A stretch of 63,450 nucleotides of DNA from the NCBI RefSeq assembly GCF_001194135.2, contig NC_068982.1, positions 144,761,239 to 144,824,688 on the forward strand, given 5' to 3'. Position 1 is the first letter of the stretch, and every line of letters begins with the position of its first letter. The notes under the pieces are model-generated. The model searched no databases, was not told the DNA's origin, and was given only the letters and a program-made list of their open reading frames with translations. This DNA comes from Octopus bimaculoides (Eukaryota). Both the position numbers and the translations under genes were made by a program. Below are positions 8,030-59,940 of the stretch, piece after piece.

Positions 8030-8233
8030 TTTACTCTTTACTTGTTTCAGTCATTTGACTGCGGCCATGCTGGAGCACCGCCTTTGGTCAAGCAAATCGA
8101 CCTCAGGACTTGTTCTCTAGAAGCCTAGTACTTATTCTATCGGTCTTTTTTGCCGAACCGCTAAGTTACGGGGACGTAAACACACCAGCATCGGTTGTCA
8201 AGCGATGTTGGGGGGACAAACACAGATGCACAA

Positions 8234-8294
<61 letters not shown>

Positions 8295-8454
8295 TACGAC
8301 GGGCTTCTTTCAGTTTCCGTCTACCAAATCCACTCACAAGGCTTTGGTCGGCCCGAGGCTATAGTAGAAGACACTTTCCCAAGATGCCACGCAGTGGGAC
8401 TGAACCCTGGACCATGTGGTTGGTAAGCTAGCTACTTACCACACAGCCACTCCT
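8030..8454 (-). mobile_element. SINE family A, full length, little decay
   Basis: tRNA-like head, ggcatcttgggaaagtgtctt CORE-like segment, internal microsatellite, tail ..gactgaaacaagtaaagag. Confidence 0.95.
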
Positions 8455-10100: not shown

Positions 10101-10539
10101 GAGGTCTGATCAATAAGTATCCAGACTGTTGTCATAGTAACAAAGCTAAAGCATGCAGAGTGAAGTCACTTGACAAAGATTGACCTCAGACTGTGCTGTG
10201 CATGCTGTTTACAGAGGTCCTTGGAAGGAAGGTGTGTAGCGTGTAATCATTGCATTGACCATGACAGAGAAAGTTGTCATGGTGATACTTGCTCAGAGGC
10301 CTATGCAAAGTTGCAGAAAGTATATAGAGAGAAGTGTATGAGTTGCACACAAATGTACAAGTGGTTCAGACGTTTCCAAGATGGCTGAAAGAATGTCTAT
10401 ATTGGCAAATGTTCTAGGAGACTTGAAACCAGTAGATCTGAGAAAAACATTGAAGATGTGCATGCAGCTGTGAGGCAAAATCGTTGAATCACCATTCATG
10501 AGTTATCAGAGGATGTGCAGATTAGTTATGGTTCAGTTC
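10101..10539 (+). mobile_element. Mariner transposon 5' fragment (TIR + HTH region, disrupted)
   Basis: Starts gaggtctgatcaataagtatccagac after (TA)n; peptide SEAYAKLQKVYREKCMSCTQMYKWFRRFQDG*..EKNIEDVHAAVRQNR*ITIHELSEDVQISYGSV is a mariner N-terminus. Confidence 0.85.
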
Positions 10540-10767: not shown

Positions 10768-11036
10768 AATCATATATATATATAGGCTAGGGATTGAACA
10801 CATACCTATTCATAAATTGTTAAAAGTAATGCTTCTGTCATGCACTGACAAGGTAAGCAGAAGCCAAAGTTCTTTCTCACTCTTTCTTCTCTTTAGAAGC
10901 TCTCAGCCAGACCAGGAACCAGCAGAATTGATCATTATCAACTCTAGCTCCAGCACAGTCTTTATTCAAGATAGGTTTCTGTTGAATGTAACATCGATTT
11001 GCTATTCTTGATTTTGCAAGGTTACCACCATATGAT

Positions 11037-11434
11037 AGGCGCAGGAGTGGCTGTGTGGTAAGTAGCTTGCTTACCAACCACATGGTTCCGGGTTCAGTCC
11101 CACTGCGTGGCACCTTCTAGTATAGCCTCAGGCTGACCAAAGCCTTGTGAGTGGATTTGGTAGATAGAAACTGAAAGAAGCCCGTCGTATATATATATAT
11201 ATATATATATATAAATATATATGTATGAGTGTTTGTGTGTCTGTGTTTGTCCCCCCACCATTGCTTGACAACCGATGCTGGTGTGTTTACATCCCCATAA
11301 CTTAGTGGTTCGGCAAGAAGAGACCGATAGAATAAGTACTAGGCTTACAAGGAATAAGTCCTGGGGTCGATTTTCTCGACTAAAGGCGGTGCTCCAGTAT
11401 GGCCGCAGTCATATGACTGAAACAAGTAAAAGAG
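11037..11434 (+). mobile_element. SINE family A, near full length
   Basis: Family match. Confidence 0.95.
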
Positions 11435-11980
11435 TATATGTTGATTAACTTTCTTTTATCTCGAAAGAACTCGAAAGAACTTTATTTCATAACAATACTT
11501 CTACAACTTATTTAACTCTATTATTTTTTTTATGAATGTTACTGAAAATTAAAAAATTCTCTAAATTACTGCCTCATACAAACTAGCACTTTAATAAACT
11601 TTTGGAAGCTAGTACATACTATTTATTGTGTTGAATAATAGTCCTACTTAATCTGATTGAGCCTTTCTTGTGGTGTTGCATAGAAAATATAAGAAAGCTT
11701 ATGATACACACTTTATTGTTATTATTTCTGCCTTTAGCAATTCCTATAATTTCTATAAATAGAAAGGCTGTTTAGCAAATTAGCACACAGGAGAAAAGGA
11801 CCTGTCAGTATACAGAAGATCAGATTATCCATCGAGATTTATTGAGGCAATAAAGTTCTAAAACATAGTGTCACTTCATACTGTTCAACTTTTGACTTCT
11901 AGCATCAGCTGGGTGAAAAATGCTTTTCCAAATTGAAGCGACACATACATAGCTGTAGTCCAAGTGTTTATCATATTTAC

Positions 11981-12059
11981 TTTCTCCCACCATCTGACCA
12001 ACATCAAGCAGGGCGAGTGACAGTATTTGCTAAACGTTAACACTGACCTTATATATCGC
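11981..12059 (-). CDS. Candidate exon 3 (RYIRSVLTFSKYCHSPCLMLVRWWEK)
   Basis: atcttacag acceptor, gtaaat donor, 79 nt; only one frame open and it ends phase 0 as needed by 2885-2946. Confidence 0.42.
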
Positions 12060-12425
12060 CTGTAAGATCAACCAACAGAACTGTGGCTGACTATAACGGG
12101 ACCAAAAAACGTCAATGAAATTCAGTAGCCTTTAAAGGGTGGAGGATTGGCTATTAGAAATAGCAAAGAGGAGAAAGAGATCTGCACTGAGTGAGATCTA
12201 AAACTCAGATTAGTTCTATGCATAAATAAATATGATTGCTACCCAAAACCTGAAAAGCTAATAAGACGCTTGGCTCCAGTTTCAATAGCAATATATGTAT
12301 AGGGGCAAGTTTGTAATTATATTTGCTAACATAATCATGTAATAATCATAATTATTGACAGTATTTATATTTCGTATGCATTATTGTTCGACACACACAT
12401 ATACATATGTTTGATGTGTGTGTGA

Positions 12426-12472
<47 letters not shown>

Positions 12473-12591
12473 TGTGTGTGTGTTTATATGTGTTTGTATA
12501 TATGTATATATATATATGTATGTCAATGTGTCATATATCTAAATAAGAACCACACTCTAAAGAATAGACCAGTAAATTATCAAAGTAATAA

Positions 12592-12753
12592 AGTTAATGT
12601 CTGGTCATAGAGTGACCAATGGTTTCACATCCACGAAAGACGTAGCTCTATGGAGTTAATTTTATTTTCAGACTAGAGTCTGAAGAGTTGTCCATGAAGC
12701 TATGGCTTTCGTGGATACAAAACCATTAGTCATTCTATGACCAGGCATTAACC

Positions 12754-12754
<1 letters not shown>
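12592..12754. mobile_element. MITE, Tourist/PIF-Harbinger-like
   Basis: ~55-bp imperfect TIRs (agttaatgtctggtcatagagtgaccaatgg / rc) and TAA on both flanks. Confidence 0.6.
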
Positions 12755-12814
<60 letters not shown>

Positions 12815-13125
12815 TTATATACTAAGTGTGACTAGGGCTTTCTTGGCTTGCTTCTCTATTAGCATATACGTTTTTGTCATCAAAATTAATGGATGATTTA
12901 ACAATTTGCTAATGTGTATACATAAAATTAATATAAACAGCAGGTTGCAATATTTCACCAAAAAGGAGAATTATGATTGTCGCTAAATGTGACTAGGGTG
13001 TTAAGAAACACCTAGATTGCTAGAAATATGAGCTAAAATGCTCCAATGCTGTATTTATTGCACATGAATGAAAACATATACACTAACAGGGATCTGAATT
13101 GTACGAAAAGTGCCAATTGAGAATT

Positions 13126-13174
13126 CTTAATACTGACGTCAGTTTCAGCAATCTCCGTTGCCTCATCAGTTAAG
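13126..13174 (-). ncRNA. Type I hammerhead ribozyme, palindromic helix III
   Basis: CTTAA-CTGATGA-GGCAAC GGAG ATTGCT-GAA-ACTGACGTCAGT-A/TTAAG; canonical core, GUA site. Confidence 0.82.
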
Positions 13175-13252
13175 CCTGCTCACTAAATCCTCCATTAATT
13201 TGGATGGTGTAAACATATATACTAATAGAGAAGCCAGCCGAGATTGAGCAGG

Positions 13253-13301
13253 CTTAACTGATGAGGTGATGGAGATTGCCGAAACTGACATGAGTATTAA
13301 G
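13253..13301 (+). ncRNA. Type I hammerhead ribozyme, second copy (helix III mutated)
   Basis: CTTAA-CTGATGA-GGTGAT GGAG ATTGCC-GAA-ACTGACATGAGT-A/TTAAG. Confidence 0.78.
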
Positions 13302-13503
13302 AATTCTCGATTGGCATTTTTCATATGATTCAGGTCCCTGTGAGTGCATGTTTTCATTCATGTGCATTAACTACAGCATTAGAGGATTTTAGCTTGTATT
13401 TCTAGCAACGTAGGTGTTTCTTAACACCCTAGTCACATTTAGTGACAATTATAATTCTCCTTTTTGGTGAAACATTGCAACCTGCTGTTTATATTGTATA
13501 TAT

Positions 13504-13731
13504 AGGCGCAAGAGTGGTTGTGTGGTAAGTAGCTTACTTACCAACCACATGGTTCCAGGTTCAGTACCATTGCATAGCACTTTGGGCAAGTGTCTTCTAC
13601 TATAGCCTCAGGCCGACCAAAGACTTAGGAGTGGATTTGATAGATGGAAACTGAAAGAAGCCCGTCGTATATATATATATATATATATAGGATCTTTCTG
13701 ATTTCGCAGGCGCCACTTTTTATTTATGTTA

Positions 13732-13763
<32 letters not shown>

Positions 13764-13960
13764 TGTGTGTGTGTTTGTCCCTCCAGCATCGCTTGACAAC
13801 CGATGCTGGTGTGTTTACGTCCCCGTAACTTAGAGGTTCAGCAAAAGGGACCGATAGAATAAGTACTAGGTTTACAAATAATAAGTCCTGGGGTCGATTT
13901 GTTCGACTAAAGGTGGTGCTCCAGCATGGCCGCAGTCAGATGACTGAAAGAAGTAAAAGA
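13504..13960 (+). mobile_element. SINE family A, full length
   Basis: Family match; abuts right arm of hammerhead repeat. Confidence 0.93.
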
Positions 13961-15632: not shown

Positions 15633-16032
15633 CGCAGGAGTGGCTGTGTGGTAAGTAGCTTGCTTACCAACCACATGGTTCAGGGTTCATTCCCACTGCG
15701 TGGCACCTTGGGCAAGTGTCTTCTACTATAGCCTCGGGCCAACCAAAGTCTTGTGAGTGGATTTGGTAGACGGAAACTGAAAGAAGCCCGTCGTATATAT
15801 GTATATATATGTATGTGTGTGTATATGTTTGTGTGCCTGCGTTTGTCCCCCCAACATCGCTTGACAACCGATGCTGGTGTGTTTATGTCCCCGTAACTTA
15901 GCGGTTCGGCAAAAAGAGACCGATAGAATAAGTAGTAGGCATCCACAGAATAAGTCGTGGGGTCGATTTGCTCGACTAAAGGCGGTGCTCCAGCATGGCC
16001 ACAGTCAAATGACTGAAACAAGTAAAAGAGTA
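15633..16032 (+). mobile_element. SINE family A, full length, CpGs retained
   Basis: Family match. Confidence 0.95.
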
Positions 16033-17009
16033 TTGTAGAAATATGACCAATTTTTTATCACATAAATTTTAACAACAAAATCATATATAGACCTCCCACT
16101 TCCAGGGCTATACGGACTCCAGTTGAGAACTACTGCTCTAAACGGTCGAACATCAACCAAGAAATAGTAGCCATGTCACCCCTCAAATCACAGACTACCG
16201 TTATAAAAAACACAAAAAGACACTTTAAACACTGTAGCCCTTGATACACAATCTGAAATAGGGGGTGGATTGACAGGGGTGTTACAAGGAGATGCCTGTA
16301 TTATTATTCTGCTCAGTTAAGGTAGACTAAGTTTAAACACAACGACTTAATTAGTGCTAAAAATACCACCCAAAACTTTTTATTCAATATAAACTCATCA
16401 ATTGTAGGTTGTTTATGAGCAGATTCAATCAGTGACAATAAAATATAGTGAATAAAATAATTATTTGATAAAATTTTAGTTAATTGTTTAATGTTCAGCT
16501 AGTTACTGAATAGTTTCCTTTATAGAATAATTTTATAAGTAAAATATTTCAGTTCCTTCAAAGACTATCCCAAAAGTCAAAATCCTGTAATAAATGGCCA
16601 GTTTCTTTCTCCTCTCTTTCTTTTTTCTCGTATACACACATTCCATCTTTTTATCTTATTTATTTATGTTTGCTTATTTGGGTTCACTTACATTTCGGCC
16701 AAGGAATTCTCTTGAATTACACCAAGAACTTTTTACAAAGAACAACATTGACAGTTAACGATAAATTCCAGACGACATTGTTAGACATAATACCCTAACC
16801 CCTTTTGACTTATCTTCGCTGCTAATCTCCGACTCTATCATCACTCGCATCACACACACACACACACACGCTACACTTCCCCCGCCAACTAACGACATTA
16901 CATTCCTTACTAGAAAATATCACACGCAAATCACACATATACCATTACCACTGTCAACAGAACATTAACAGCTAAAACACAACACACACACACAGAACCA
17001 GAGGGCGTT

Positions 17010-17860
17010 TCTACGAGGTCACTCGACTTGCTGGAAAATAACAGCAGCCAAATTTCTTTCTAATCACATTTTGCTATCTTATAAAATGAAGGACACGTTA
17101 GATAATGTAGTCCAAGATAGCCCATGCCTGAGTATTTGCTAGAAAATAGTAACCAAATTTCCTTCAAATCACATTTTGCTATTTTATAAAAAGAAGAACA
17201 CATTAGATAATGTAGTCCTAGATTATGCTTGAGTAGCCATAGCTGGAACGTCTTTGGCAGGTCAGTTCGATTAGATCTGACCTGGGAGCGATGCAAGTAC
17301 AGACACACGAGTACAACACCCGTTCCTTCCCAACTCCATTATTACACAAATACACATCTATACAAACTACCAGCTTCATACAGAGAGCCGTCAAAACTGA
17401 CACATGTAATACAAACATAGGCAAGCACAGACACGCAGTTTCACACACACACACACACACACACGTGTATGTATCTCAATAAGGAAGCCACTAAGAGGTC
17501 GTTCGAGTTGCTAAAAATAACAGTAAAATCTCCCTCAACTCATACCCTACAGTCTTTCTTGAAAAAAAGACATATTGGATGATATAGTCCTAAATACTCT
17601 ATGTATGAATAAAAGACTGGGGGGGGGGTCATGGCTGGAATGACTTTGATCCTAATTTGACTCAACAGAGTTGAGCGGTGGCTAAATAACAGCGGAGGCA
17701 CCTCTTTGTGGTTATTTGACCTGCTAGAAATAGTATCAAATTTCCTCAACTTACACCCTGTCAACTTAAAAAAAGGAAGAATACATTGAAAAATAGCAGT
17801 CAAAGCTAGAATGCCTTTGGTCATAGATCTGCTCGATTGGGGCTAACCTGGAATTAAAAG
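17010..17860 (+). repeat. Cluster of four degenerate copies of unclassified repeat family F
   Basis: Unit ..ttgctagaaatagcagccaaat..tcaaatcaca..cattggataatgtagtcc; other copies ~4840, 16160, 23745, 44115. Confidence 0.75.
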
Positions 17861-20230: not shown

Positions 20231-20969
20231 TATAGACTATGTTGCCGGGGATGAGAGAAACTTAAGGGTTCACCCGGGCGGCACACACTCTAGCTATGCC
20301 ATTTGCTGGTACATTGCACCAGTGTCTTGGGAATCTGGTACACAAAAACAGTATAAAAATCTGTCGTTACACACATTGTGTGAGTATGTGTACATGCATG
20401 CATATGCATACCAGGCAAATATAACATTAGAGACAAATAACAGTAATATTGTTTCTAATATAGGTGCGAGGCATGAAGTTTGAGGGGAATAGAAACGCCA
20501 AGTAAATCAACCTCAGTAGGGGAGACCGAGTCTAGTTGTTATATTTTTTCATTTTTCCCCTTGGCTCCCACATAAATGAACATAGCTAAAGTTTCTTTTC
20601 AGATTTAATTAGTAAAACATCTCTATTTATTGTTATCACCAGCAAAAAAACAGAAATTACATAACATTAATTAGACAGGTTCTAATTAATGAGTTGGTGT
20701 CAGCTGTAACAAATTTCCCCGAGTGCGGAGTACATTGTGACACTTACTGGGGTACTTTGTTACAACTGTCGATAAGTCGGAATCATGTTAACAAACAAGT
20801 TTAAAATGAATACGTCTCCTGCTTCTTGCATCTAGGAAGTATTATTTTAATTAATTAACTGTGCTTTTGAACCACCTCATATCCTAACTGTGATACTGAG
20901 AGTCCTCATCAGCCAATTTCCCCATTGTTACATGTGCCATCTAGTCGGAATCGTCCTTCTCACCGAAGA

Positions 20970-21344
20970 TCACAGAAAGTCCTGTCGTCCATCGGGACAG
21001 TCAGTGTGTGCCCAGTCGTTACAGATCATGCATTGCACCCATTCTTCACCTGGAAGGGAGTTGGAATACCAATCTGAGCAGACAAGGCATTTCCAATCGG
21101 CGACTTGCTTGCTGCGAGGCTGCTTCCCTTTGTCTTTACCTCTTTTAGTTGACTTTCCCTTCCCCTTTGTTGCTTTTTCTGTACCAGTTGCCGTCTTTGG
21201 TTTGGATTTCCGTTCGTTTATTTCATCCACTATGCGCCGTTGTACGGCAACATCCCGTAATGGTTTATTTTCATCCACAACTTTTCTGGCGGCTCTTTCC
21301 ATGACATCCCCCCTTGTAGTCTTCCTTTTGTAATTTCTAGGAAT
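20970..21344 (-). pseudogene. Internally deleted pogo-like transposase: N-terminal psq-type HTH start fused to C-terminal PHD-like finger
   Basis: IPRNYKRKTTRGDVMERAARKVVDENKPLRDVAVQ|RRIVDE..WKCLVCSDWYSNSLPGEEWVQCMICNDWAHTDC; no DDE core. Confidence 0.78.
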
Positions 21345-21688
21345 GGCGTGTTAAACTGAAATAGAAGGTGTAAGTTGTTACATGCCTGGGGTAAGTTGAT
21401 ACATTGTAACAATTAGCCCCGACCATGGATTTCTAGGGATTACTTCGTACACAGCACTAGCAATGCATGGCATCCAGGACACACCTTCATGTATCGAAGG
21501 CAACTTCCAACACTTCCTAATGAGCCACAAACTACTTCAGTAACACCACATATGCTTTGGCAGTTAAGGAAATAACTTTGTGGCAAAATTCACTTTTGGA
21601 GTAAAAAATCGTTTTTTGAGCCATACTTTTCCTCGTTTCACCCCGCCAATGCAATACACATGTGCAGTCATGATGCTATGGAGTTGGC

Positions 21689-22806
21689 TGTAGTGAAACT
21701 AACACCTCGATCGCCACTACATATGAAACTACCTATCGCCATTAGATACAAAACTGCTATCGCCATTCTTCTCATTTAGATATAAACAAACGCGGGCGTA
21801 GCGGAGAACCCATTCCTTGTCATCACGTGACTGATTAATATTCGAAGCGGCAACTTCTTCGAACCGTTCCCGCCAGAACGCAAACTGACCAATCACAGCC
21901 CTTAATAAGGTCACGTGATAGTGTTTTTCTGCTACCGTCTTGGAGCCCTCTGAACGCTATAAATAGATCAACTCATACCCACCAAATTGGTCTCGGTTCA
22001 GTTTCTCTTTGAGATCTGTTCCGTGTACCACACGACAGCAGCAGCAGCGGCAGCCAGCGACACATCAACAGCTTCGTCCAACGATGACCACCGCCGCCGC
22101 CACATCAGCAACACGAGTCTACGACTACTAACCAGCATCATCGTCATNNNNNNNNNNNNNNNNNNNNNNNNNNNNNNNNNNNNNNNNNNNNNNNNNNNNN
22201 NNNNNNNNNNNNNNNNNNNNNNNNNNNNNNNNNNNNNNNNNNNNNNNNNNNNNNNNNNNNNNNNNNNNNNNNNNNNTAAACAGACAACAATCTCAGCCAG
22301 CGACGAACATCTGTATAACAAGAATCACGGCCCGGCATGGAAGCCACGACATCACAACTAGTGATCAGCTCTGCCACACAGCCTCAACTCCCTTCACATA
22401 CAGACTCATACTAATGGTACTCTAAGAACTGGTATAAATGCTCACGTGTTATTGACTCTCTTTCTATCTGCTGTAATATCTCACATACACATACATGTAT
22501 CACTCACATACATACTTTTCTTTGTATGACGGCCTGTCTTTGATTATGTTTTTATATGTCGCATTCACACTCACACACAGACATACATCTTTAACGCCAT
22601 AATAAATACCTCTGTTATTCATCTAATACGGTTGTGGTCTTTCATTACTGGTCATTTATGTTATCGTAGTATAACATCATTATGTATATCATATTTGATA
22701 TATATTATTTTGTGTTCGACCGTGTGACACGTTTAAATAAAAGGAGTCCTCTGTTTTTCCATTCGTCACCATTTCCCCTTTTTGAGTTCGCACGGTCGTC
22801 CTTACA
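21689..22806 (+). mobile_element. Solo LTR (Gypsy-like), contains 130-N gap
   Basis: TGTA...TACA termini, perfect 4-bp TSD TGGC, CCAAT 21889, TATAAATA 21958, AATAAA 22601 and 22736. Confidence 0.82.
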
Positions 22807-24159: not shown

Positions 24160-24687
24160 CACACACACATACATACATACATATGTATATATATATATAT
24201 ATNNNNNNNNNNNNNNNNNNNNNNNNNNNNNNNNNNNNNNNNNNNNNNNNNNNNNNNNNNNNNNNNNNNNNNNNNNNNNNNNNNNNNNNNNNNNNNNNNN
24301 NNNNNNNNNNNNNNNNNNNNNNNNNNNNNNNNNNNNNNNNNNNNNNNNNNNNNNNNNNNNNNNNNNNNNNNNNNNNNNNNNNNNNNNNNNNNNNNNNNNN
24401 NNNNNNNNNNNNNNNNNNNNNNNNNNNNNNNNNNNNNNNNNNNNNNNNNNNNNNNNNNNNNNNNNNNNNNNNNNNNNNNNNNNNNNNNNNNNNNNNNNNN
24501 NNNNNNNNNNNNNNNNNNNNNNNNNNNNNNNNNNNNNNNNNNNNNNNNNNAACGCTCATGATCCTTTATCTTTTAAAGACTTCCAACAAGTGGGATGGAG
24601 GAAAGAAGTTATTCTCAAACCGAAGGCCTGATCCGAATGTTTATTGCAGAGTGAACTCCGCTAAAGGCACTAAAGGTTTCAATTTAG

Positions 24688-29111: not shown

Positions 29112-30561
29112 TAGTCATCAAGGTCAATATAAATATCCTCACACGGGAAGAAAAAACAAAAAAAAAACAAAAACAAATTAACCAGCCGGGGTGTGTTAAC
29201 AAGTGTGTGGGAAACGAATATGAAAAAAAATGCGCGCTGACAACCCTGGGCGGGGAGGGGCTTTCGGAAAATTCACAAGATCCGATTTTTCCATCATAAA
29301 TTCGGGTAAAATGGATATAAATTAATTTTTTTAAAACGGAATCCCACGTTTTTGGTTATGGAGGATCCGATTCTGAGAGAAAAAAAATTTTTTTTTCAAA
29401 AATCGCATTTTCAAAATTTCATTATGTTATCGCAGTTTTGTGAGGTCTAGCTGTTATTTCTAGCATGTGGATAACTTGCTTGAAGGCCTGAGGGTATCTC
29501 TTTTACTCGTTTCAGCCATGACTGCGGCCATGCTGGAGCATCGCCTTTATTGTCGAGCAAAATCGACCCCAGAGCTTATTTTTTGTAAGCCTAGTACTTA
29601 TTCTATCGGTCTCTTTTGCTGAAAGCTAGGTTACGTGGACGTAAACACACCAGCATCGGTTGTCAAACGATGTTGGGGAGACAAACAGACACACAAACAT
29701 ATACACATATATACGACGGGCCTCTTCCAGCTTCCGTCCACCGTATCCACTCACAAGGCCTTGGTCAGCCCGAGGCTATAGTAGAAGACACTTGCCCAAT
29801 GTGTCACGCAGTGGGACTGAACCCGGGATCATGTGGTTGGTAAGCAAGCTATTTACCACACAGCCACTCCTGCGTCTATATATTCTTTTTATTTTTCTTG
29901 TTGAAATATTGAAATTTTACAAATTTTTTTCAGAATCGTATTCTTCGTATTTTACTTCGTATTACGCAGAAGAAAAAAAAAAAATTCTAGAAAAAATGAA
30001 AAGTGAAGGGAGGGTAGACGGTAGGGTAGGGTGGGGGTTGAAATTTTGAAAATGCGATTTTTGAAAATTTTTTTTCNNNNNNNNNNNNNNNNNNNNNNNN
30101 NNNNNNNNNNNNNNNNNNNNNNNNNNNNNNNNNNNNNNNNNNNNNNNNNNNNNNNNNNNNNNNNNNNNNNNNNNNNNNNNNNNNNNNNNNNNNNNNNNNN
30201 NNNNNNNNNNNNNNNNNNNNNNNNNNNNNNNNNNNNNNNNNNNNNNNNNNNNNNNNNNNNNNNNNNNNNNNNNNNNNNNNNNNNNNNNNNNNNNNNNNNN
30301 NNNNNNNNNNNNNNNNNNNNNNNNNNNNNNNNNNNNNNNNNNNNNNNNNNNNNNNNNNNNNNNNNCTATCCATTTTACCTGAAGTTATGCCGGAAAAATC
30401 GAATCTTGTGAATTTTCCGAAAGTCCCCTCCCCACCCCCAGGGTCGTCGGCGCGCATTTTTTTCATACTCGTTTTCCATATACTTGTTAACATCTCCCAG
30501 GCTGGTTAATTTTCTTTTTTTTTTACTCGGGTCAAGGTCTTTATATTGACCGTCTTTGATA
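29112..30561. mobile_element. Foldback-type element with ~310-bp inverted arms; SINE-A in the spacer
   Basis: 29122-29422 is the reverse complement of 30039-30551 (interrupted by N gap). Confidence 0.8.
29495..29878 (-). mobile_element. SINE family A, full length
   Basis: Family match. Confidence 0.92.
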
Positions 30562-49513: not shown

Positions 49514-49564
<51 letters not shown>

Positions 49565-50555
49565 NNNNNNNNNNNNNNNNNNNNNNNNNNNNNNNNNNNN
49601 NNNNNNNNNNNNNNNNNNNNNNNNNNNNNNNNNNNNNNNNNNNNNNNNNNNNNNNNNNNNNNNNNNNNNNNNNNNNNNNNNNNNNNNNNNNNNNNNNNNN
49701 NNNNNNNNNNNNNNNNNNNNNNNNNNNNNNNNNNNNNNNNNNNNNNNNNNNNNNNNNNNNNNNNNNNNNNNNNNNNNNNNNNNNNNNNNNNNNNNNNNNN
49801 NNNNNNNNNNNNNNNNNNNNNNNNNNNNNNNNNNNNNNNNNNNNNNNNNNNNNNNNNNNNNNNNNNNNNNNNNNNNNNNNNNNNNNNNNNNNNNNNNNNN
49901 NNNNNNNNNNNNNNNNNNNNNNNNNNNNNNNNNNNNNNNNNNNNNNNNNNNNNNNNNNNNNNNNNNNNNNNNNNNNNNNNNNNNNNNNNNNNNNNNNNNN
50001 NNNNNNNNNNNNNNNNNNNNNNNNNNNNNNNNNNNNNNNNNNNNNNNNNNNNNNNNNNNNNNNNNNNNNNNNNNNNNNNNNNNNNNNNNNNNNNNNNNNN
50101 NNNNNNNNNNNNNNNNNNNNNNNNNNNNNNNNNNNNNNNNNNNNNNNNNNNNNNNNNNNNNNNNNNNNNNNNNNNNNNNNNNNNNNNNNNNNNNNNNNNN
50201 NNNNNNNNNNNNNNNNNNNNNNNNNNNNNNNNNNNNNNNNNNNNNNNNNNNNNNNNNNNNNNNNNNNNNNNNNNNNNNNNNNNNNNNNNNNNNNNNNNNN
50301 NNNNNNNNNNNNNNNNNNNNNNNNNNNNNNNNNNNNNNNNNNNNNNNNNNNNNNNNNNNNNNNNNNNNNNNNNNNNNNNNNNNNNNNNNNNNNNNNNNNN
50401 NNNNNNNNNNNNNNNNNNNNNNNNNNNNNNNNNNNNNNNNNNNNNNNNNNNNNNNNNNNNNNNNNNNNNNNNNNNNNNNNNNNNNNNNNNNNNNNNNNNN
50501 NNNNNNNNNNNNNNNNNNNNNNNNNNNNNNNNNNNNNNNNNNNNNNNNNNNNNNN

Positions 50556-50597
<42 letters not shown>

Positions 50598-52120: not shown

Positions 52121-53381
52121 AAATAGACACCTTTAATTTTCAAAATCTTTTATTTAATATGCAAAGTGAACAATTAAAATGTAATCGATAGGTAGGACTA
52201 CATACTTTAGTATTTAGTTGACATTCCCTTTGCAGTTTTTAATTCAGAAACTCTTTTTGGCATTGAACTGATGAGCTTTGTGATAGTCTCTTGTGGAATT
52301 TCTGCCCACTTTTCACGCAACAATCGAAACAATTCATCATTAAATTTAGGTTTCTGTTGAGTTTGTCATGCAGCACTATCTAGTATGCTCCTAAAATTTT
52401 CAATTGGGTTCATGTCAGGAGATTGGCTCAGCCAAGGAAGCTTTTTGATCCCATTTTCAGTCAGCCATTGTTGATTCCTTTTCGCTGTGTGGCATGGAGC
52501 CCCATCTTCCATGAATAAAAACTCATTTTCTGTTATGTTATTGTGTGAATACATTGGAAGTTGTCTTTACTTAAGTATTTCGATGTATTTTTCAGAGTTT
52601 ATGGTTCCAACACATTCGATCAGCTCAGAACGACCATTCTTGGTGATAGCTCTCCATACCATTACAGAGATACTGCCATGTTTCACAGTTGGTTGGGGTC
52701 ATTTCAAATCAAATTCTTGATTGAGAAGCCTCCAGACCCAAACACATCCATTGTCTGAATATAATGCAAATTTGGATTCATCTGAGAAAATCACTCTATC
52801 CCAAAATGAACAGGATTTTTCTGACATCTCCTTAGCCCATTTCTTTCTTTTCATGATATTAATTGGTTGATGGAGGGGTTTTCTTCTAGCTGCTTGTCCA
52901 TAATACCCAAGCTTATGCAGATATGTAACACACATTTTTGGACTAACTTCTAGCTGCTTTGCAATGTCAGAAGCCTTCAAACGTGGTTCATTTTCCACAA
53001 TTCTCTTCAAACAGCAAAGCTTCCTTTGCAAGGGCCCAGGTTGGTTGGGATGAGAATCTATTGATTCTTTTCCTTGGCTTTTGAATTGCACAATAATCCT
53101 ATTAACAGTAGCAAGAGAAATTTGAAGATTTTCCGCAATTTTTCACTGGCTAAGACCAGCCTTAGATTGACCAACAATATGACCTCTTTAAAAATCTCAC
53201 ATTTCAGCTGAATGTTTTGTGCATAGCATGGTTACTCATTGCAAATGTTTAATATAATGACACCTAGAATGAAAAAGAATAATTACATTGTAAATTCTAC
53301 ACCGCTGGAAACATTAAGATGCTTAGATCAGAAATTTTGAAAATTAAAGGTGTGTGTCTATTTACTTCCTGCATGTCTGTG
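52121..53381 (-). mobile_element. Tc1-like DNA transposon (left end runs into N gap)
   Basis: TIR aaatagacac(ac)ctttaattttcaaaat at both ends; right end followed by TA. Confidence 0.9.
52207..53229 (-). pseudogene. Tc1 DD34E transposase pseudogene, 340 codons, six internal stops, no frameshift
   Basis: RGHIVG..SDESKF..TVKHG..MEDGAPCH(34 aa)..SPDMNPIEN in one frame. Confidence 0.93.
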
Positions 53382-53396
53382 TATATATAAATATTG

Positions 53397-57996: not shown

Positions 57997-59940
57997 AGTG
58001 ATAGTGATAGTGAGTGGCGACGGCATTCCTTTTGTGTTTTTAAATGTTTCAGAGAGGACGTGAGAGAGAGAGAGAGAATGGTGACGGCGTTCGTTTTGTG
58101 ATTTTAAATATTTATCACATCGCAAGAAAAGTAGATACATAGATCGAAAGAAAAGTTGATATATAGATACATACGCACATTGTTAAATTAAAAGCAGGAG
58201 AGAGGAGGGACACAGAGAAAGTGAAAGAGAAAGAGAGAAAATGACAGACAGTAGATACATAGATCGAAAGAAAATTTGATACATAGATACAGACACAGCA
58301 AATATTGGATGTCACTTTCACTTTTCATTACCACACAAGGATAAAACTAACTCGCAAGTGGCTGAGTACACCACAGACATGCATATCATTAACATAGTCC
58401 TCAGGGAGATCAGCCTCACTCAGAATGTGACATGGCTGGCCCCTTTGACTTATAGCTACAGCTCATTTTTGTCAGCTGAGTGGACTGCAGCAGGGCGAAG
58501 TAGTGTACCTTGCTCAAAGATACAGCGCGCCGCAGGGAATCGTACTCATGACTTTACAATCGTGGGCCGAATGCCCCTAACCACTGAGCCACGCACCTTG
58601 ACTCTCTTAACCGTAGAGAAAAGGAGTGAAGCGATAGAGAAAGAGAAAGGAAAGCCTCAGTCATTTACAATGACAATTAAACTGAAATACGATCGATCTT
58701 TTCTAGCTTCTTTACTTTTAACAATGAAGAAGAGGGAAAGACATTTAGTGATGAATAGAAGGAAATTCTTTCAGGAGTTTGTGTCTTTATTCTGGAAATT
58801 CCAAAACGATCAAATGTTAGTTCTCTCTTCTTCCCCCCCCCCTGCTACTTATTCGCCTTCTTTCATAGTTCTTCATGTCTTTATTTGAGGGGGAAAGACC
58901 ATGTTTCTTTTTTCAGGCACATTTAATGTTTTCCCTANNNNNNNNNNNNNNNNNNNNNNNNNNNNNNNNNNNNNNNNNNNNNNNNNNNNNNNNNNNNNNN
59001 NNNNNNNNNNNNNNNNNNNNNNNNNNNNNNNNNNNNNNNNNNNNNNNNNNNNNNNNNNNNNNNNNNNNNNNNNNNNNNNNNNNNNNNNNNNNNNNNNNNN
59101 NNNNNNNNNNNNNNNNNNNNNNNNNNNNNNNNNNNNNNNNNNNNNNNNNNNNNNNNNNNNNNNNNNNNNNNNNNNNNNNNNNNNNNNNNNNNNNNNNNNN
59201 NNNNNNNNNNNNNNNNNNNNNNNNNNNNNNNNNNNNNNNNNNNNNNNNNNNNNNNNNNNNNNNNNNNNNNNNNNNNNNNNNNNNNNNNNNNNNNNNNNNN
59301 NNNNNNNNNNNNNNNNNNNNNNNNNNNNNNNNNNNNNNNNNNNNNNNNNNNNNNNNNNNNNNNNNNNNNNNNNNNNNNNNNNNNNNNNNNNNNNNNNNNN
59401 NNNNNNNNNNNNNNNNNNNNNNNNNNNNNNNNNNNNNNNNNNNNNNNNNNNNNNNNNNNNNNNNNNNNNNNNNNNNNNNNNNNNNNNNNNNNNNNNNNNN
59501 NNNNNNNNNNNNNNNNNNNNNNNNNNNNNNNNNNNNNNNNNNNNNNNNNNNNNNNNNNNNNNNNNNNNNNNNNNNNNNNNNNNNNNNNNNNNNNNNNNNN
59601 NNNNNNNNNNNNNNNNNNNNNNNNNNNNNNNNNNNNNNNNNNNNNNNNNNNNNNNNNNNNNNNNNNNNNNNNNNNNNNNNNNNNNNNNNNNNNNNNNNNN
59701 NNNNNNNNNNNNNNNNNNNNNNNNNNNNNNNNNNNNNNNNNNNNNNNNNNNNNNNNNNNNNNNNNNNNNNNNNNNNNNNNNNNNNNNNNNNNNNNNNNNN
59801 NNNNNNNNNNTTCAAGTCTTTCTCAATTATCTCCCTTTGGGGTGTTTCCAAAGTTTTATTTTCGTTTCTCTATTGTTAATTTTACTCGCGTCTCTATCTT
59901 AGTAGAAACTAGTGGAAACTCGCGTATCTATCTTAGTATA

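What the first reader, a model, noticed from the sequence alone, without database searches (positions are those of the whole stretch)
12822..13495. Inverted pair of canonical hammerhead ribozymes in a ~340-nt retrozyme-like unit
Seen: two ~250-bp arms in inverted orientation each contain CTTAA-CTGATGA-[6-bp helix II, GGAG loop]-GAA-ACTGACGTCAGT-A-TTAAG, i.e. helix I, an exact CUGANGA/GAAA core and a GUA cleavage site. Helix III is a loop-less 12-nt palindrome. The copies carry different lesions (G10.1-U in one, helix III mismatches in the other) and their consensus is a perfect ribozyme. The spacer recurs beyond the left arm after a 28-nt linker, implying a tandem monomer of ~340 nt. Established: type I hammerheads with palindromic helix III act as dimers and mark Penelope-like elements and small non-autonomous retrozymes that yield circular RNAs. 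Inference: this is a non-coding, self-cleaving, possibly circRNA-forming mobile family in a cephalopod. I do not know of a description of it, but cannot check.
Basis: partly seen in the sequence, partly recalled or inferred. Interest (0 to 1): 0.9.

Follow-up and report, generated by a model that had tools for sequence, protein, structure and literature searches.

The report
Inverted hammerhead retroelement insertion in octopus
Two mirror-image, decaying copies of a short non-coding mobile element that carries a hammerhead self-cleaving RNA motif sit in a TA microsatellite of an octopus genome. The motif is real, but the locus looks like an ordinary dead insertion of a well-known class: hammerhead-bearing elements associated with Penelope-like retrotransposons, including retrozymes.

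Summary
Arms 12930-13182 (-) and 13245-13495 (+) are 90% identical inverted copies. Each starts with a complete type I hammerhead: CUGAUGA, GAA, A15.1-U16.1, A17 and helices I-III. My descriptor hits only these two sites in 63 kb, and 1 of 300 shuffles gives any hit. Rfam does not call them.

The host is an Octopus species. The element is a dispersed family. Octopus vulgaris holds an independent copy (L009) with an intact core and pair-preserving changes, plus a 5'-truncated fragment (L002).

In both species the copies lie head-to-head, with 3' ends facing outward next to (TA)n. This matches the published signature of Penelope-like-element (PLE) integration, and opposite-strand hammerhead pairs were already reported in Schistosoma.

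The unit is non-coding, 34% GC and about 342 nt, and the two window copies are circular permutations of it. That hints at a tandem or circular template, but I found no tandem array.

This locus cannot release a monomer: the two ribozymes are on opposite strands, and a transcript would fold into a -391 kcal/mol hairpin. The arms differ neutrally (JC 0.107).

Verdict: a new member of a known kind, of modest interest. Circular RNA and activity remain untested.

The parts
12757..12821 (.). (TA)n microsatellite on the left flank; presumed insertion target
   Evidence: TRF finds period 2 with 32.5 copies. Other family copies also abut (TA)n.
12822..12840 (-). 19-nt terminal extension of the minus copy. 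It matches 16 of 19 positions of an internal body segment (CCCTAGTCACA..TTAG). It is tail-like, and its origin is unclear.
   Evidence: Read from the sequence and alignment. The inverted copy in L009 is 5'-truncated in the same body segment.
12841..12900 (-). Second copy of segment S. In the minus copy it lies downstream of body plus linker.
   Evidence: 83% identical to 13184-13243 in inverted orientation.
12901..12929 (-). Linker; 3'-terminal family sequence (AATTTTATGTATACACAT...)
   Evidence: Conserved after GTTTATATT in both O. vulgaris L009 copies.
12930..13117 (-). Body of the minus copy (non-coding)
   Evidence: Inverted repeat with 13310-13495. Stops are shared in all frames.
13118..13182 (-). 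Hammerhead, minus copy. The core is intact and 10.1-11.1 is a G.U pair. Helix III is a perfect 12-nt palindrome that contains TGACGTCA. The predicted cut lies between 13131 and 13130.
13183..13183 (.). Junction base where the 5' ends of the two copies meet head-to-head
   Evidence: Alignment of the two units.
13184..13244 (+). Segment S. It sits immediately upstream of the plus hammerhead and pairs with the 24 nt that follow helix I in the RNA fold.
   Evidence: (repeats D5 and I8).
13245..13309 (+). Hammerhead, plus copy. The core is intact, 10.1-11.1 is G-C, there are two G.U wobbles in helix II, and helix III has two mismatches. The predicted cut lies between 13296 and 13297.
13310..13495 (+). 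Body of the plus copy, ending ...GCTGTTTATATT
13496..13505 (.). Remnant of TA-rich target on the right flank, followed by a SINE-like repeat with several partial copies in the window (about 13506-13960)
   Evidence: Sequence read directly. The repeat recurs in the window and in octopus loci.

Best explanation
This is an old, inactive, head-to-head double insertion of a short non-coding retroelement that carries a type I hammerhead ribozyme. The unit is about 342 nt, 34% GC, and is ordered S - hammerhead - body - linker.

The family belongs to the hammerhead-bearing sequences associated with Penelope-like elements (PLEs): pLTR-derived elements, also called animal 'non-LTR retrozymes'.

Inferred mechanism:
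1. A multimeric or circular transcript of the family was used as template by a PLE reverse transcriptase with a GIY-YIG endonuclease.
2. That enzyme cuts AT-rich DNA, here a (TA)n microsatellite, and primes cDNA synthesis from both cut strands.
3. The two cDNAs grew toward each other and were joined at 13183. The 3' ends face outward, and the variably positioned 5' ends meet in the centre.

In the source element the hammerhead would cut after GUA (A17) to process multimeric RNA.

At this locus the two ribozymes lie on opposite strands and would be locked in a 250-bp hairpin, so the locus is a dead end. It has since decayed neutrally.

Shown: the motif, the architecture, the non-coding nature, multi-copy status across two octopus genomes, and the recurrent head-to-head and (TA)n context.

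Inferred: PLE mobilisation, a tandem or circular template, and self-cleavage.
For: Motif:
- The core and all three helices are complete in both copies.
- The descriptor is specific: 2 hits in the window, and 1 of 300 shuffles gives any hit.

Family:
- O. vulgaris locus L009 1122-1400 is a 70-77% identical copy in unrelated flanks.
- All 12 invariant core nucleotides are kept in that copy.
- Across the three hammerheads 92% of structure cells pair and 3 pairs change on both sides. Slid controls give 23-44% paired and 0-1 such pairs.
- L002 542-703 is a 5'-truncated 3' fragment that ends in (TA)n.

Architecture:
- In both the window and L009 an inverted 5'-truncated copy abuts the hammerhead-bearing copy head-to-head, next to (TA)n.
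- This matches published PLE insertion structure: an inverted 5'-truncated copy, a tail, and (TA)n targets (PMC8557442).
- A purified PLE protein cuts and extends both strands at AT-rich sites (PMC11167929).
- 'Dual min-HHRs ... ~100-700 bp ... in opposite strands' have been reported (PMC4209133).

Unit:
- The minus copy (13182->12841) is exactly one permuted unit. The plus copy is the same circle opened elsewhere.
- The linker is family sequence.
- GC is 34%, and the circular fold has z = -2.3.
- There is no open reading frame.

Decay: 25 differences in 251 positions, 19 transitions to 6 transversions, 8 in CpG context. The hammerhead is no better conserved than the rest.

Partner elements:
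- Penelope elements are abundant in octopus (PMC13282606, PMC8967140).
- A degraded PLE reverse transcriptase is present in sampled O. vulgaris DNA.
Against: - There is no PLE coding sequence anywhere in the 63-kb window (tblastn). No family copy was found attached to a PLE ORF, so PLE mobilisation rests on analogy.
- I found no head-to-tail tandem array. Segment S following the linker is seen only at this one locus.
- No target-site duplication can be read in the microsatellite.
- The 19-nt end piece does not match the published 30-40-nt PLE tail.
- Rfam hammerhead models do not match the window copies. The O. vulgaris copy reaches only 21 bits against a threshold of 48.5.
- The thermodynamic minimum-energy fold of the 65-mer is not the hammerhead fold (-15.8 versus -10.1 kcal/mol).
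- Covariation rests on three sequences, and 40 of 500 shuffles reach the observed values.
- There are no expression or cleavage data.
Confidence: 0.62

Rival explanations
1. It is a fragment of an autonomous Penelope-like element: a solo pLTR or ORF-start region plus its inverted truncated partner. On this view it is not a separate short non-autonomous family.
For: - In PLEs the hammerhead lies at the pLTR-ORF junction, and insertions are heavily 5'-truncated (PMC11167929, PMC8557442, PMC4209133).
- The AUG inside CUGAUGA opens a 27-codon frame in the minus copy.
Against: - All three sense frames downstream of the hammerhead carry stops shared by both copies, so the sequence was non-coding when duplicated.
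- S recurs about 280 nt downstream of the hammerhead, which implies a period of about 342 nt rather than about 3 kb.
- The window shows no similarity to a PLE protein. tblastn with the same PLE protein found nothing in locus L009, which holds the O. vulgaris family copy.
Confidence: 0.12
2. This is the first reader's reading: the locus is a live retrozyme-like unit whose transcripts self-cleave, as dimers, and yield circular RNAs of about 340 nt.
For: - The cores are intact in both copies.
- Helix III is palindromic and could pair between two molecules.
- The unit size, low GC and lack of coding capacity match animal retrozymes (PMC7229834).
Against: - The two hammerheads are on opposite strands. 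Any transcript therefore holds only one sense ribozyme, and no unit can be excised.
- A transcript would fold into a near-perfect hairpin of -391 kcal/mol, z = -42.6.
- Both copies carry lesions, and the arms diverge neutrally.
- There is no tandem array.
Confidence: 0.05
3. It is a DNA-level structure: a foldback or MITE-type DNA transposon with 250-bp terminal inverted repeats, or a local inverted duplication. It merely carries a hammerhead-bearing sequence.
For: - It is a long, near-perfect inverted repeat with a 62-nt loop, flanked by TA-rich DNA.
- Another hairpin element lies just upstream, at 12586-12759.
Against: - The extra S and linker outside the left arm make the two copies permuted rather than symmetric.
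- In O. vulgaris the inverted partner has a different length (about 90-115 nt) while the other copy is complete. That fits variable 5' truncation and not fixed terminal repeats.
- A lone 5'-truncated 3' fragment exists.
- No matching target-site duplication was found at 12930/13495.
Confidence: 0.1
4. It is a chance hammerhead-like motif inside an unrelated repeat.
For: - Rfam gives no hammerhead match for the window copies.
- The two copies count as one independent occurrence.
Against: - The descriptor is expected 0.003 times per window.
- The motif is retained, with an intact core and paired changes, in a copy that has diverged by about 25% in another species.
- The architecture, including the helix I internal loop, recurs in another octopus hammerhead family.
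Confidence: 0.02
5. The locus now acts as a hairpin-RNA gene, for example a source of dsRNA, small RNAs or ADAR substrates, whatever its origin.
For: - The predicted hairpin is extremely stable.
- The only Rfam match is a long-hairpin miRNA model, MIR869, at 97 bits.
Against: - The MIR869 match is far below its threshold of 330 bits. It is a plant family and reflects only the inverted repeat.
- The arms accumulate uncompensated differences.
- There is no evidence of transcription.
Confidence: 0.05

Closest known systems
Hammerheads of Penelope-like elements, and their truncated or inverted remnants (Cervera & De la Pena 2014, PMC4209133; Craig et al. 2021, PMC8557442; Frangieh et al. 2024, PMC11167929)
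   Same: - A type I hammerhead with a long helix II (5-6 bp), a short proximal helix I (5 bp) and a palindromic helix III.
- Pairs of motifs a few hundred bp apart on opposite strands.
- An inverted 5'-truncated copy adjacent to the main copy.
- AT-rich or (TA)n insertion sites.
- Mostly dispersed truncated copies.
- The O. vulgaris copy has the extra nucleotide between A9 and G10.1.
   Different: - No reverse transcriptase or GIY-YIG ORF is attached or nearby.
- Helix III is a stable 4-5 bp stem, not the 0-2 bp of 'min-HHRs'.
- The window copies lack the extra nucleotide.
- The 19-nt end piece is not the canonical 30-40-nt tail.
Animal non-LTR retrozymes (Cervera & de la Pena 2020, PMC7229834; Li et al. 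2026 preprint, 10.64898/2026.07.22.740005)
   Same: - A non-coding, low-GC unit within the 170-400 nt size range that carries a type I hammerhead.
- A dispersed family with monomeric derivatives.
- Likely dependence on PLEs.
- The permuted copies suggest a tandem or circular template.
   Different: - The defining head-to-tail tandem arrangement was not observed for this family.
- circRNA has not been shown.
- The two hammerheads here are inverted.
Schistosoma Sm-alpha SINE-like elements and newt satellite 2 (classical genomic type I hammerheads; from my own knowledge and PMC4209133)
   Same: - A short, non-coding, abundant repeat carrying a type I hammerhead.
- Helix I has an internal loop.
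- A weak or palindromic helix III is thought to allow dimer action.
   Different: - No Pol III boxes or tRNA-like head were seen in the unit (ARAGORN negative).
- There is no satellite array.
- Helix III here is longer.

Membership tests
Hammerhead ribozyme, type I | Conserved core: C3 U4 G5 A6 N7 G8 A9, G12 A13 A14, the A15.1-U16.1 pair, and H17 not G | tested here: met
   Both window copies and the O. vulgaris copy have it.
Hammerhead ribozyme, type I | Three helices around the core, with helix I open-ended | tested here: met
   The descriptor hits only these sites. The structure was evaluated. 92% of structure cells pair across 3 sequences.
Hammerhead ribozyme, type I | Covariation supporting the helices | tested here: inconclusive
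   Three pairs change on both sides, against 0-1 in slid controls. Only 3 sequences are available, and 40 of 500 shuffles reach the observed value.
Hammerhead ribozyme, type I | Match to Rfam Hammerhead_1/3 at gathering score | tested here: not met
   The window copies give no match, even at E<=10. The L009 copy scores 21.2 bits on Hammerhead_3, below its threshold of 48.5.
Hammerhead ribozyme, type I | Site-specific self-cleavage | not testable with these tools
   This needs in vitro transcription.
Animal non-LTR retrozyme | Head-to-tail tandem repeats, each unit with a hammerhead on the same strand | tested here: not met
   Only microsatellites are tandem here. The two hammerheads are inverted. 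The sampled family copies show no array. The permuted copies only hint at a tandem or circular template.
Animal non-LTR retrozyme | Unit of about 170-400 nt, low GC, non-coding | tested here: met
   The inferred unit is 342 nt with 34% GC. Stops are shared in all frames.
Animal non-LTR retrozyme | Expressed as linear and circular RNA | not testable with these tools
   No transcriptome data could be reached.
Penelope-like element (autonomous) | A single ORF with a reverse transcriptase and a GIY-YIG endonuclease | tested here: not met
   tblastn with the Poseidon_Ac protein against the window returns only noise at E>4.
PLE-type insertion product | An inverted 5'-truncated copy adjacent head-to-head; partial tandem or complex structure | tested here: met
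   Seen in the window and independently in L009.
PLE-type insertion product | AT-rich or (TA)n target | tested here: met
   (TA)n lies next to the outer 3' ends in the window, at the left end of L009 and at L002. The other L009 end abuts (TG)n.
PLE-type insertion product | A 30-40-nt 'tail' at one end | tested here: inconclusive
   There is a 19-nt extension at one end only (12822-12840). It derives from an internal segment and is not contiguous sequence.
PLE 'min-HHR' variant | An unpaired nucleotide between A9 and G10.1, a G10.1-C11.1 pair, palindromic 15.2-16.2, and little or no helix III | tested here: inconclusive
   The extra A occurs only in the L009 copy. G-C occurs in the plus copy and L009, and G.U in the minus copy. 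The palindrome is present, but helix III is 4-5 bp.
MITE / foldback DNA transposon | Fixed terminal inverted repeats with a target-site duplication | tested here: not met
   No matching duplication was found at the arm ends. The length of the inverted partner differs between loci.
MIR869 microRNA precursor (Rfam RF04143) | Gathering score of 330 bits | tested here: not met
   The score is 97 bits, and the match only reflects the long inverted repeat.

The most novel reading that the evidence does not exclude
Octopus genomes may carry a large, so far undescribed population of short hammerhead-bearing retroelements that home to (TA)n microsatellites.

- I saw at least four families. My rough estimate from a small sample is 10^3-10^5 copies for this family alone.
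- Some families may still be active retrozymes that produce circular RNAs of about 340 nt.
- Their frequent head-to-head insertions create long perfect hairpins, which could feed dsRNA pathways such as ADAR editing or small RNAs in cephalopods.
- Helix III of this family also embeds a perfect cAMP-response-element palindrome (TGACGTCA). That could double as a promoter element.
Probability: 0.15. Interest if true: 0.55.

Novelty: new member of a known kind. Interest (0 to 1): 0.3.

Why it matters
The locus adds cephalopods to the animals in which PLE-type hammerhead elements can be traced at sequence level. None of the papers I could search describes octopus hammerhead families, and the curated Rfam models miss them.

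The recurrent head-to-head copies next to (TA)n, seen in two octopus species, fit in genomic data the recent biochemical finding that a PLE protein cuts and extends both DNA strands.

In practice, such insertions create long hairpins and AT-rich junctions. These can confuse assembly, miRNA prediction and repeat annotation. As a single locus it is a decayed, non-functional copy.

Tried and rejected
**Rfam.**
- The whole window at gathering score gave nothing.
- The region at E<=10, and each motif alone, gave no hammerhead match.
- The MIR869 match is a hairpin artefact.

**Looking for further copies.**
- blastn of the unit against the window found no other copy.
- A six-frame pseudo-protein of the region, searched against 5.8 billion proteins to catch ORFs called on other copies, gave nothing at E<=1.
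- Exact-pattern scans of metagenome contigs (both scans used) and viral contigs, with the hammerhead and with a conserved 30-mer, gave 0 hits.
- Exact look-up of ten window ORFs found none in the collection.

**Looking for the orthologous locus.** I tried to reach it through the TE ORF at 20973-21302. The O. vulgaris loci retrieved are paralogous TE copies. The presence or absence of this insertion in a sister species therefore could not be scored.

**Looking for a PLE.**
- tblastn with the Poseidon_Ac protein against the window was negative.
- Against sampled octopus DNA it found one degraded reverse transcriptase (L002), with no hammerhead of this family attached.

**Other checks.**
- Coding potential downstream of the AUG in CUGAUGA was rejected, because the stops are shared.
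- A tRNA-like head or Pol III origin was rejected, because ARAGORN is negative.
- A minimum-energy fold of the isolated 65-mer does not give the hammerhead fold. This is not decisive, because tertiary contacts are not modelled.
- A covariance model built from the three hammerheads found no further members in 350 kb. The only other hit was a weak match (19.4 bits) to another octopus hammerhead family.

Full report
**1. The observation**

- Two inverted arms, 12930-13182 and 13245-13495, are 226/251 identical.
- Each arm begins, at the centre of the structure, with a complete type I hammerhead.
- Its order is: helix I 5' strand UGAGCAGGCUUAA, CUGAUGA, helix II with a GGAG loop, GAA, a 12-nt helix III, A17, and helix I 3' strand UUAAGAAUUCUC(A/G).
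- The minus copy has a G10.1-U11.1 pair and a perfect palindrome ACUGACGUCAGU.
- The plus copy has G10.1-C11.1, two G.U wobbles in helix II and two mismatches in helix III.
- Helix III can also fold on its own as a 4-bp stem with an ACGU loop. "Loop-less" is therefore one option, not a necessity.

I wrote a structural descriptor: CUGANGA, helix II of at least 4 bp, GAA, an A...U helix III of at least 3 bp, H17, and helix I of at least 4 bp.
- It finds only these two sites in 63 kb.
- It hits 1 of 300 dinucleotide shuffles.

Rfam does not recognise either copy, at gathering score or at E<=10. The only strong Rfam row is MIR869 at 97 bits against a threshold of 330. It merely reflects the long inverted repeat.

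**2. Anatomy of the locus**

Reading each copy in hammerhead sense gives two different layouts.
- The plus copy is S (13184-13243), then T, then the hammerhead, then the body, ending ...GTTTATATT at 13495.
- The minus copy is the hammerhead (from 13182), the body (to 12930), a 29-nt linker (12929-12901), S again (12900-12841, 83% identical), and 19 nt that resemble an internal body segment (12840-12822).

The two copies are therefore circular permutations of one unit of about 342 nt (GC 34%). Their 5' ends meet at base 13183, and their 3' ends point outward.

The flanks are a 65-bp (TA)n on the left and GTATATATA followed by a SINE-like repeat on the right. There is no tandem array and no other copy in the window.

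All three sense frames contain stop codons shared by both copies, so the element was non-coding when it was duplicated.

The arms differ by 19 transitions and 6 transversions, 8 of them in CpG context, giving JC 0.107.
- The hammerhead (7 differences in 65 nt) is no better preserved than the rest. This is neutral decay.
- A published octopus calibration puts JC 0.09 to consensus at about 25 My (PMC13282606). On that scale the insertion would be roughly 15 My old. This is an inference.

**3. Host and family**

TE-derived ORFs in the window match only Octopus vulgaris or O. bimaculoides proteins, at 58-88% identity. The host is an Octopus species.

Those proteins gave me access to 286 kb of octopus chromosome sequence. 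In it I found the same family twice.

L009 (O. vulgaris OX597816.1) holds a 70-77% identical copy at 1122-1400.
- Its hammerhead is at 1122-1189.
- An inverted 5'-truncated copy (1103-988) immediately precedes it, head-to-head.
- The left flank is (TA)n and the right flank is (TG)n.
- The flanks are unrelated to the window, so this is an independent insertion with the same architecture.

L002 542-703 is a 5'-truncated 3' fragment that ends in (TA)n.

The linker sequence is conserved after GTTTATATT in both L009 copies. It is therefore part of the element and not filler.

The O. vulgaris hammerhead keeps all 12 invariant core nucleotides despite about 23% divergence. By simple binomial reasoning the chance of this is about 0.04.

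Its helices change in a pair-preserving way:
- A-U to U-A in helix II.
- U-A to C-G and A-U to U.G in helix I.
- An inserted G.U pair in helix III.

On the three sequences, 92% of cells pair and 3 pairs change on both sides. Slid controls give 23-44% paired and 0-1 such pairs. With n=3 the shuffle control is weak (40/500).

The O. vulgaris copy also shows that G10.1-C11.1 is ancestral and that the top 'pair' of helix II is ancestrally C.A. It carries the unpaired nucleotide between A9 and G10.1 that is typical of PLE hammerheads. It scores 21 bits on Rfam Hammerhead_3, which is below threshold.

**4. What it most likely is**

The published properties of Penelope-like elements fit the locus point by point.
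- PLE hammerheads have long helix II, short helix I and palindromic helix III. Most copies are truncated. [quoted passage not shown] were noted in Schistosoma (PMC4209133).
- PLE insertions are 5'-truncated and form partial tandems. They often carry an inverted 5'-truncated copy at the 5' end and prefer microsatellites such as (TA)n (PMC8557442).
- A purified PLE protein cuts AT-rich DNA and extends both strands (PMC11167929). That gives a direct mechanism for head-to-head copies.
- Animal non-LTR retrozymes are 170-400-nt, low-GC, non-coding tandem units with type I hammerheads (PMC7229834). They have recently been argued to derive from PLE pLTRs, with many dispersed monomers (10.64898/2026.07.22.740005).
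- Penelope elements are abundant in octopus (PMC13282606, PMC8967140), and I found a degraded PLE reverse transcriptase in the sampled DNA.

I therefore read the locus as a decayed double insertion of a PLE-dependent, hammerhead-bearing non-autonomous element.

The permutation of the two copies suggests a multimeric or circular template. This is the weakest link, because S after the linker is seen only here and no array was found.

There is no PLE ORF in the window, so the link to PLE machinery is by analogy.

**5. What it is not**

The locus is not a working retrozyme.
- The ribozymes are on opposite strands, so no transcript contains two sense hammerheads.
- Any transcript across the locus would fold into a 250-bp hairpin of -391 kcal/mol, z = -42.6.

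The DNA-transposon or foldback reading is disfavoured for three reasons:
- The copies are permuted rather than symmetric.
- The inverted partner differs in length between the two loci.
- A solitary 5'-truncated fragment exists.

**6. Context and novelty**

The same 286 kb holds three other hammerhead-bearing short families.
- A multi-copy element of about 200 nt carries a textbook PLE min-HHR (CUGACGA-A-GAGC-UCC-GCUC-GAAAC-GU-U). It always ends in (TA)n and is once found head-to-head.
- A family of about 250 nt, flanked by (TA)n in one of its two copies, shows compensatory changes between the copies.
- A motif with a 10-nt palindromic helix III scores 19 bits on Rfam Hammerhead_1.

Hammerhead elements are thus common in octopus DNA, and a single locus is unremarkable.

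The literature I could search has no description of octopus hammerhead families. One report lists 235 Rfam Hammerhead_1 hits in the giant squid (PMC6962438).

I classify the finding as a new member of a known kind, with modest interest.

Noticed in passing
L001 17084-17270; L002 9240-9000, 4910-5140, 4160-4020; L010 725-516: A multi-copy O. vulgaris element of about 200 nt with a conserved PLE-type min-HHR (UUU-CUGACGA-A-GAGC-UCC-GCUC-GAAAC-GU-U|AAA). Every aligned copy ends ...GGATTAAC followed by TA repeats. In L001, a 55-nt, 98% identical inverted copy of its 5' end (16980-17034) lies head-to-head across a 49-nt TA-repeat spacer.
   Followed up: partly
L001 16652-16896 (+) and L009 275-34 (-): A second octopus hammerhead family of about 250 nt. 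The L001 copy lies between two (TA)n tracts. The two copies are 82% identical, with compensatory changes in helices II and III. Helix I has the same internal-loop layout as the window's ribozyme, and my covariance model scores the L001 copy at 19.4 bits.
   Followed up: partly
L011 29988-30034 (+): Another hammerhead candidate, with a perfect 10-nt palindromic helix III (AUGCAUGCAU) and C17. It scores 19.2 bits on Rfam Hammerhead_1 (E 0.014), below the threshold of 34.
   Followed up: no
window 13134-13141: Helix III of the minus-copy hammerhead contains the perfect palindrome TGACGTCA, which is the consensus cAMP-response element (from my own knowledge). A role as a promoter element in the source family is pure speculation.
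   Followed up: no
window 13142-13170 (-) and 13257-13285 (+): The best small Rfam match to the core plus helix II is the 3' end of JPX_2, a mammalian lncRNA conserved region with consensus ACUGAUGAGGcUaGGaGGUUGCAGAAAC. It scores 14-15 bits at E 0.3-0.5. The match is not significant, but that consensus itself looks like a hammerhead core remnant.
   Followed up: no
window 12586-12759: A 174-bp hairpin (69-nt arms, 83% complementary, 36-nt loop) lies directly upstream, between microsatellites. It looks like a MITE or a foldback element.
   Followed up: no
window 20515-21688 (ORF 20970-21302, - strand); L002 9688-10668: A repeat carrying a cysteine/histidine-rich (possibly zinc-finger/PHD-like) ORF has copies in O. 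vulgaris that are 87-91% identical. In L002 it lies directly upstream of a degraded PLE reverse transcriptase (10854-12519), in the same orientation. It may therefore be the 5' part of an octopus PLE.
   Followed up: partly
window 8034-8454, 11035-11434, 13506-13960, 15633-16032, 29498-29884: Several copies of an abundant SINE-like repeat with an internal TA/TG microsatellite. One copy abuts the right end of the hammerhead element.
   Followed up: partly
window 52121-53384; about 10164-10385; about 1400-1525: Other TE remnants. One is a Tc1-like transposase with broken frames, 92% identical to an ENA contig (L006). Another is a possible transposase N-terminal (mariner-like) fragment. A third is a possible reverse-transcriptase fragment (FVDLEKASDRVP). 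The last two were identified by eye only.
   Followed up: partly
window, e.g. about 22130-22330, 24200-24550, 49560-50560, 58940-59840: Many runs of N next to microsatellites. The window comes from a gapped draft assembly, so repeat structures near the gaps may be incomplete.
   Followed up: no
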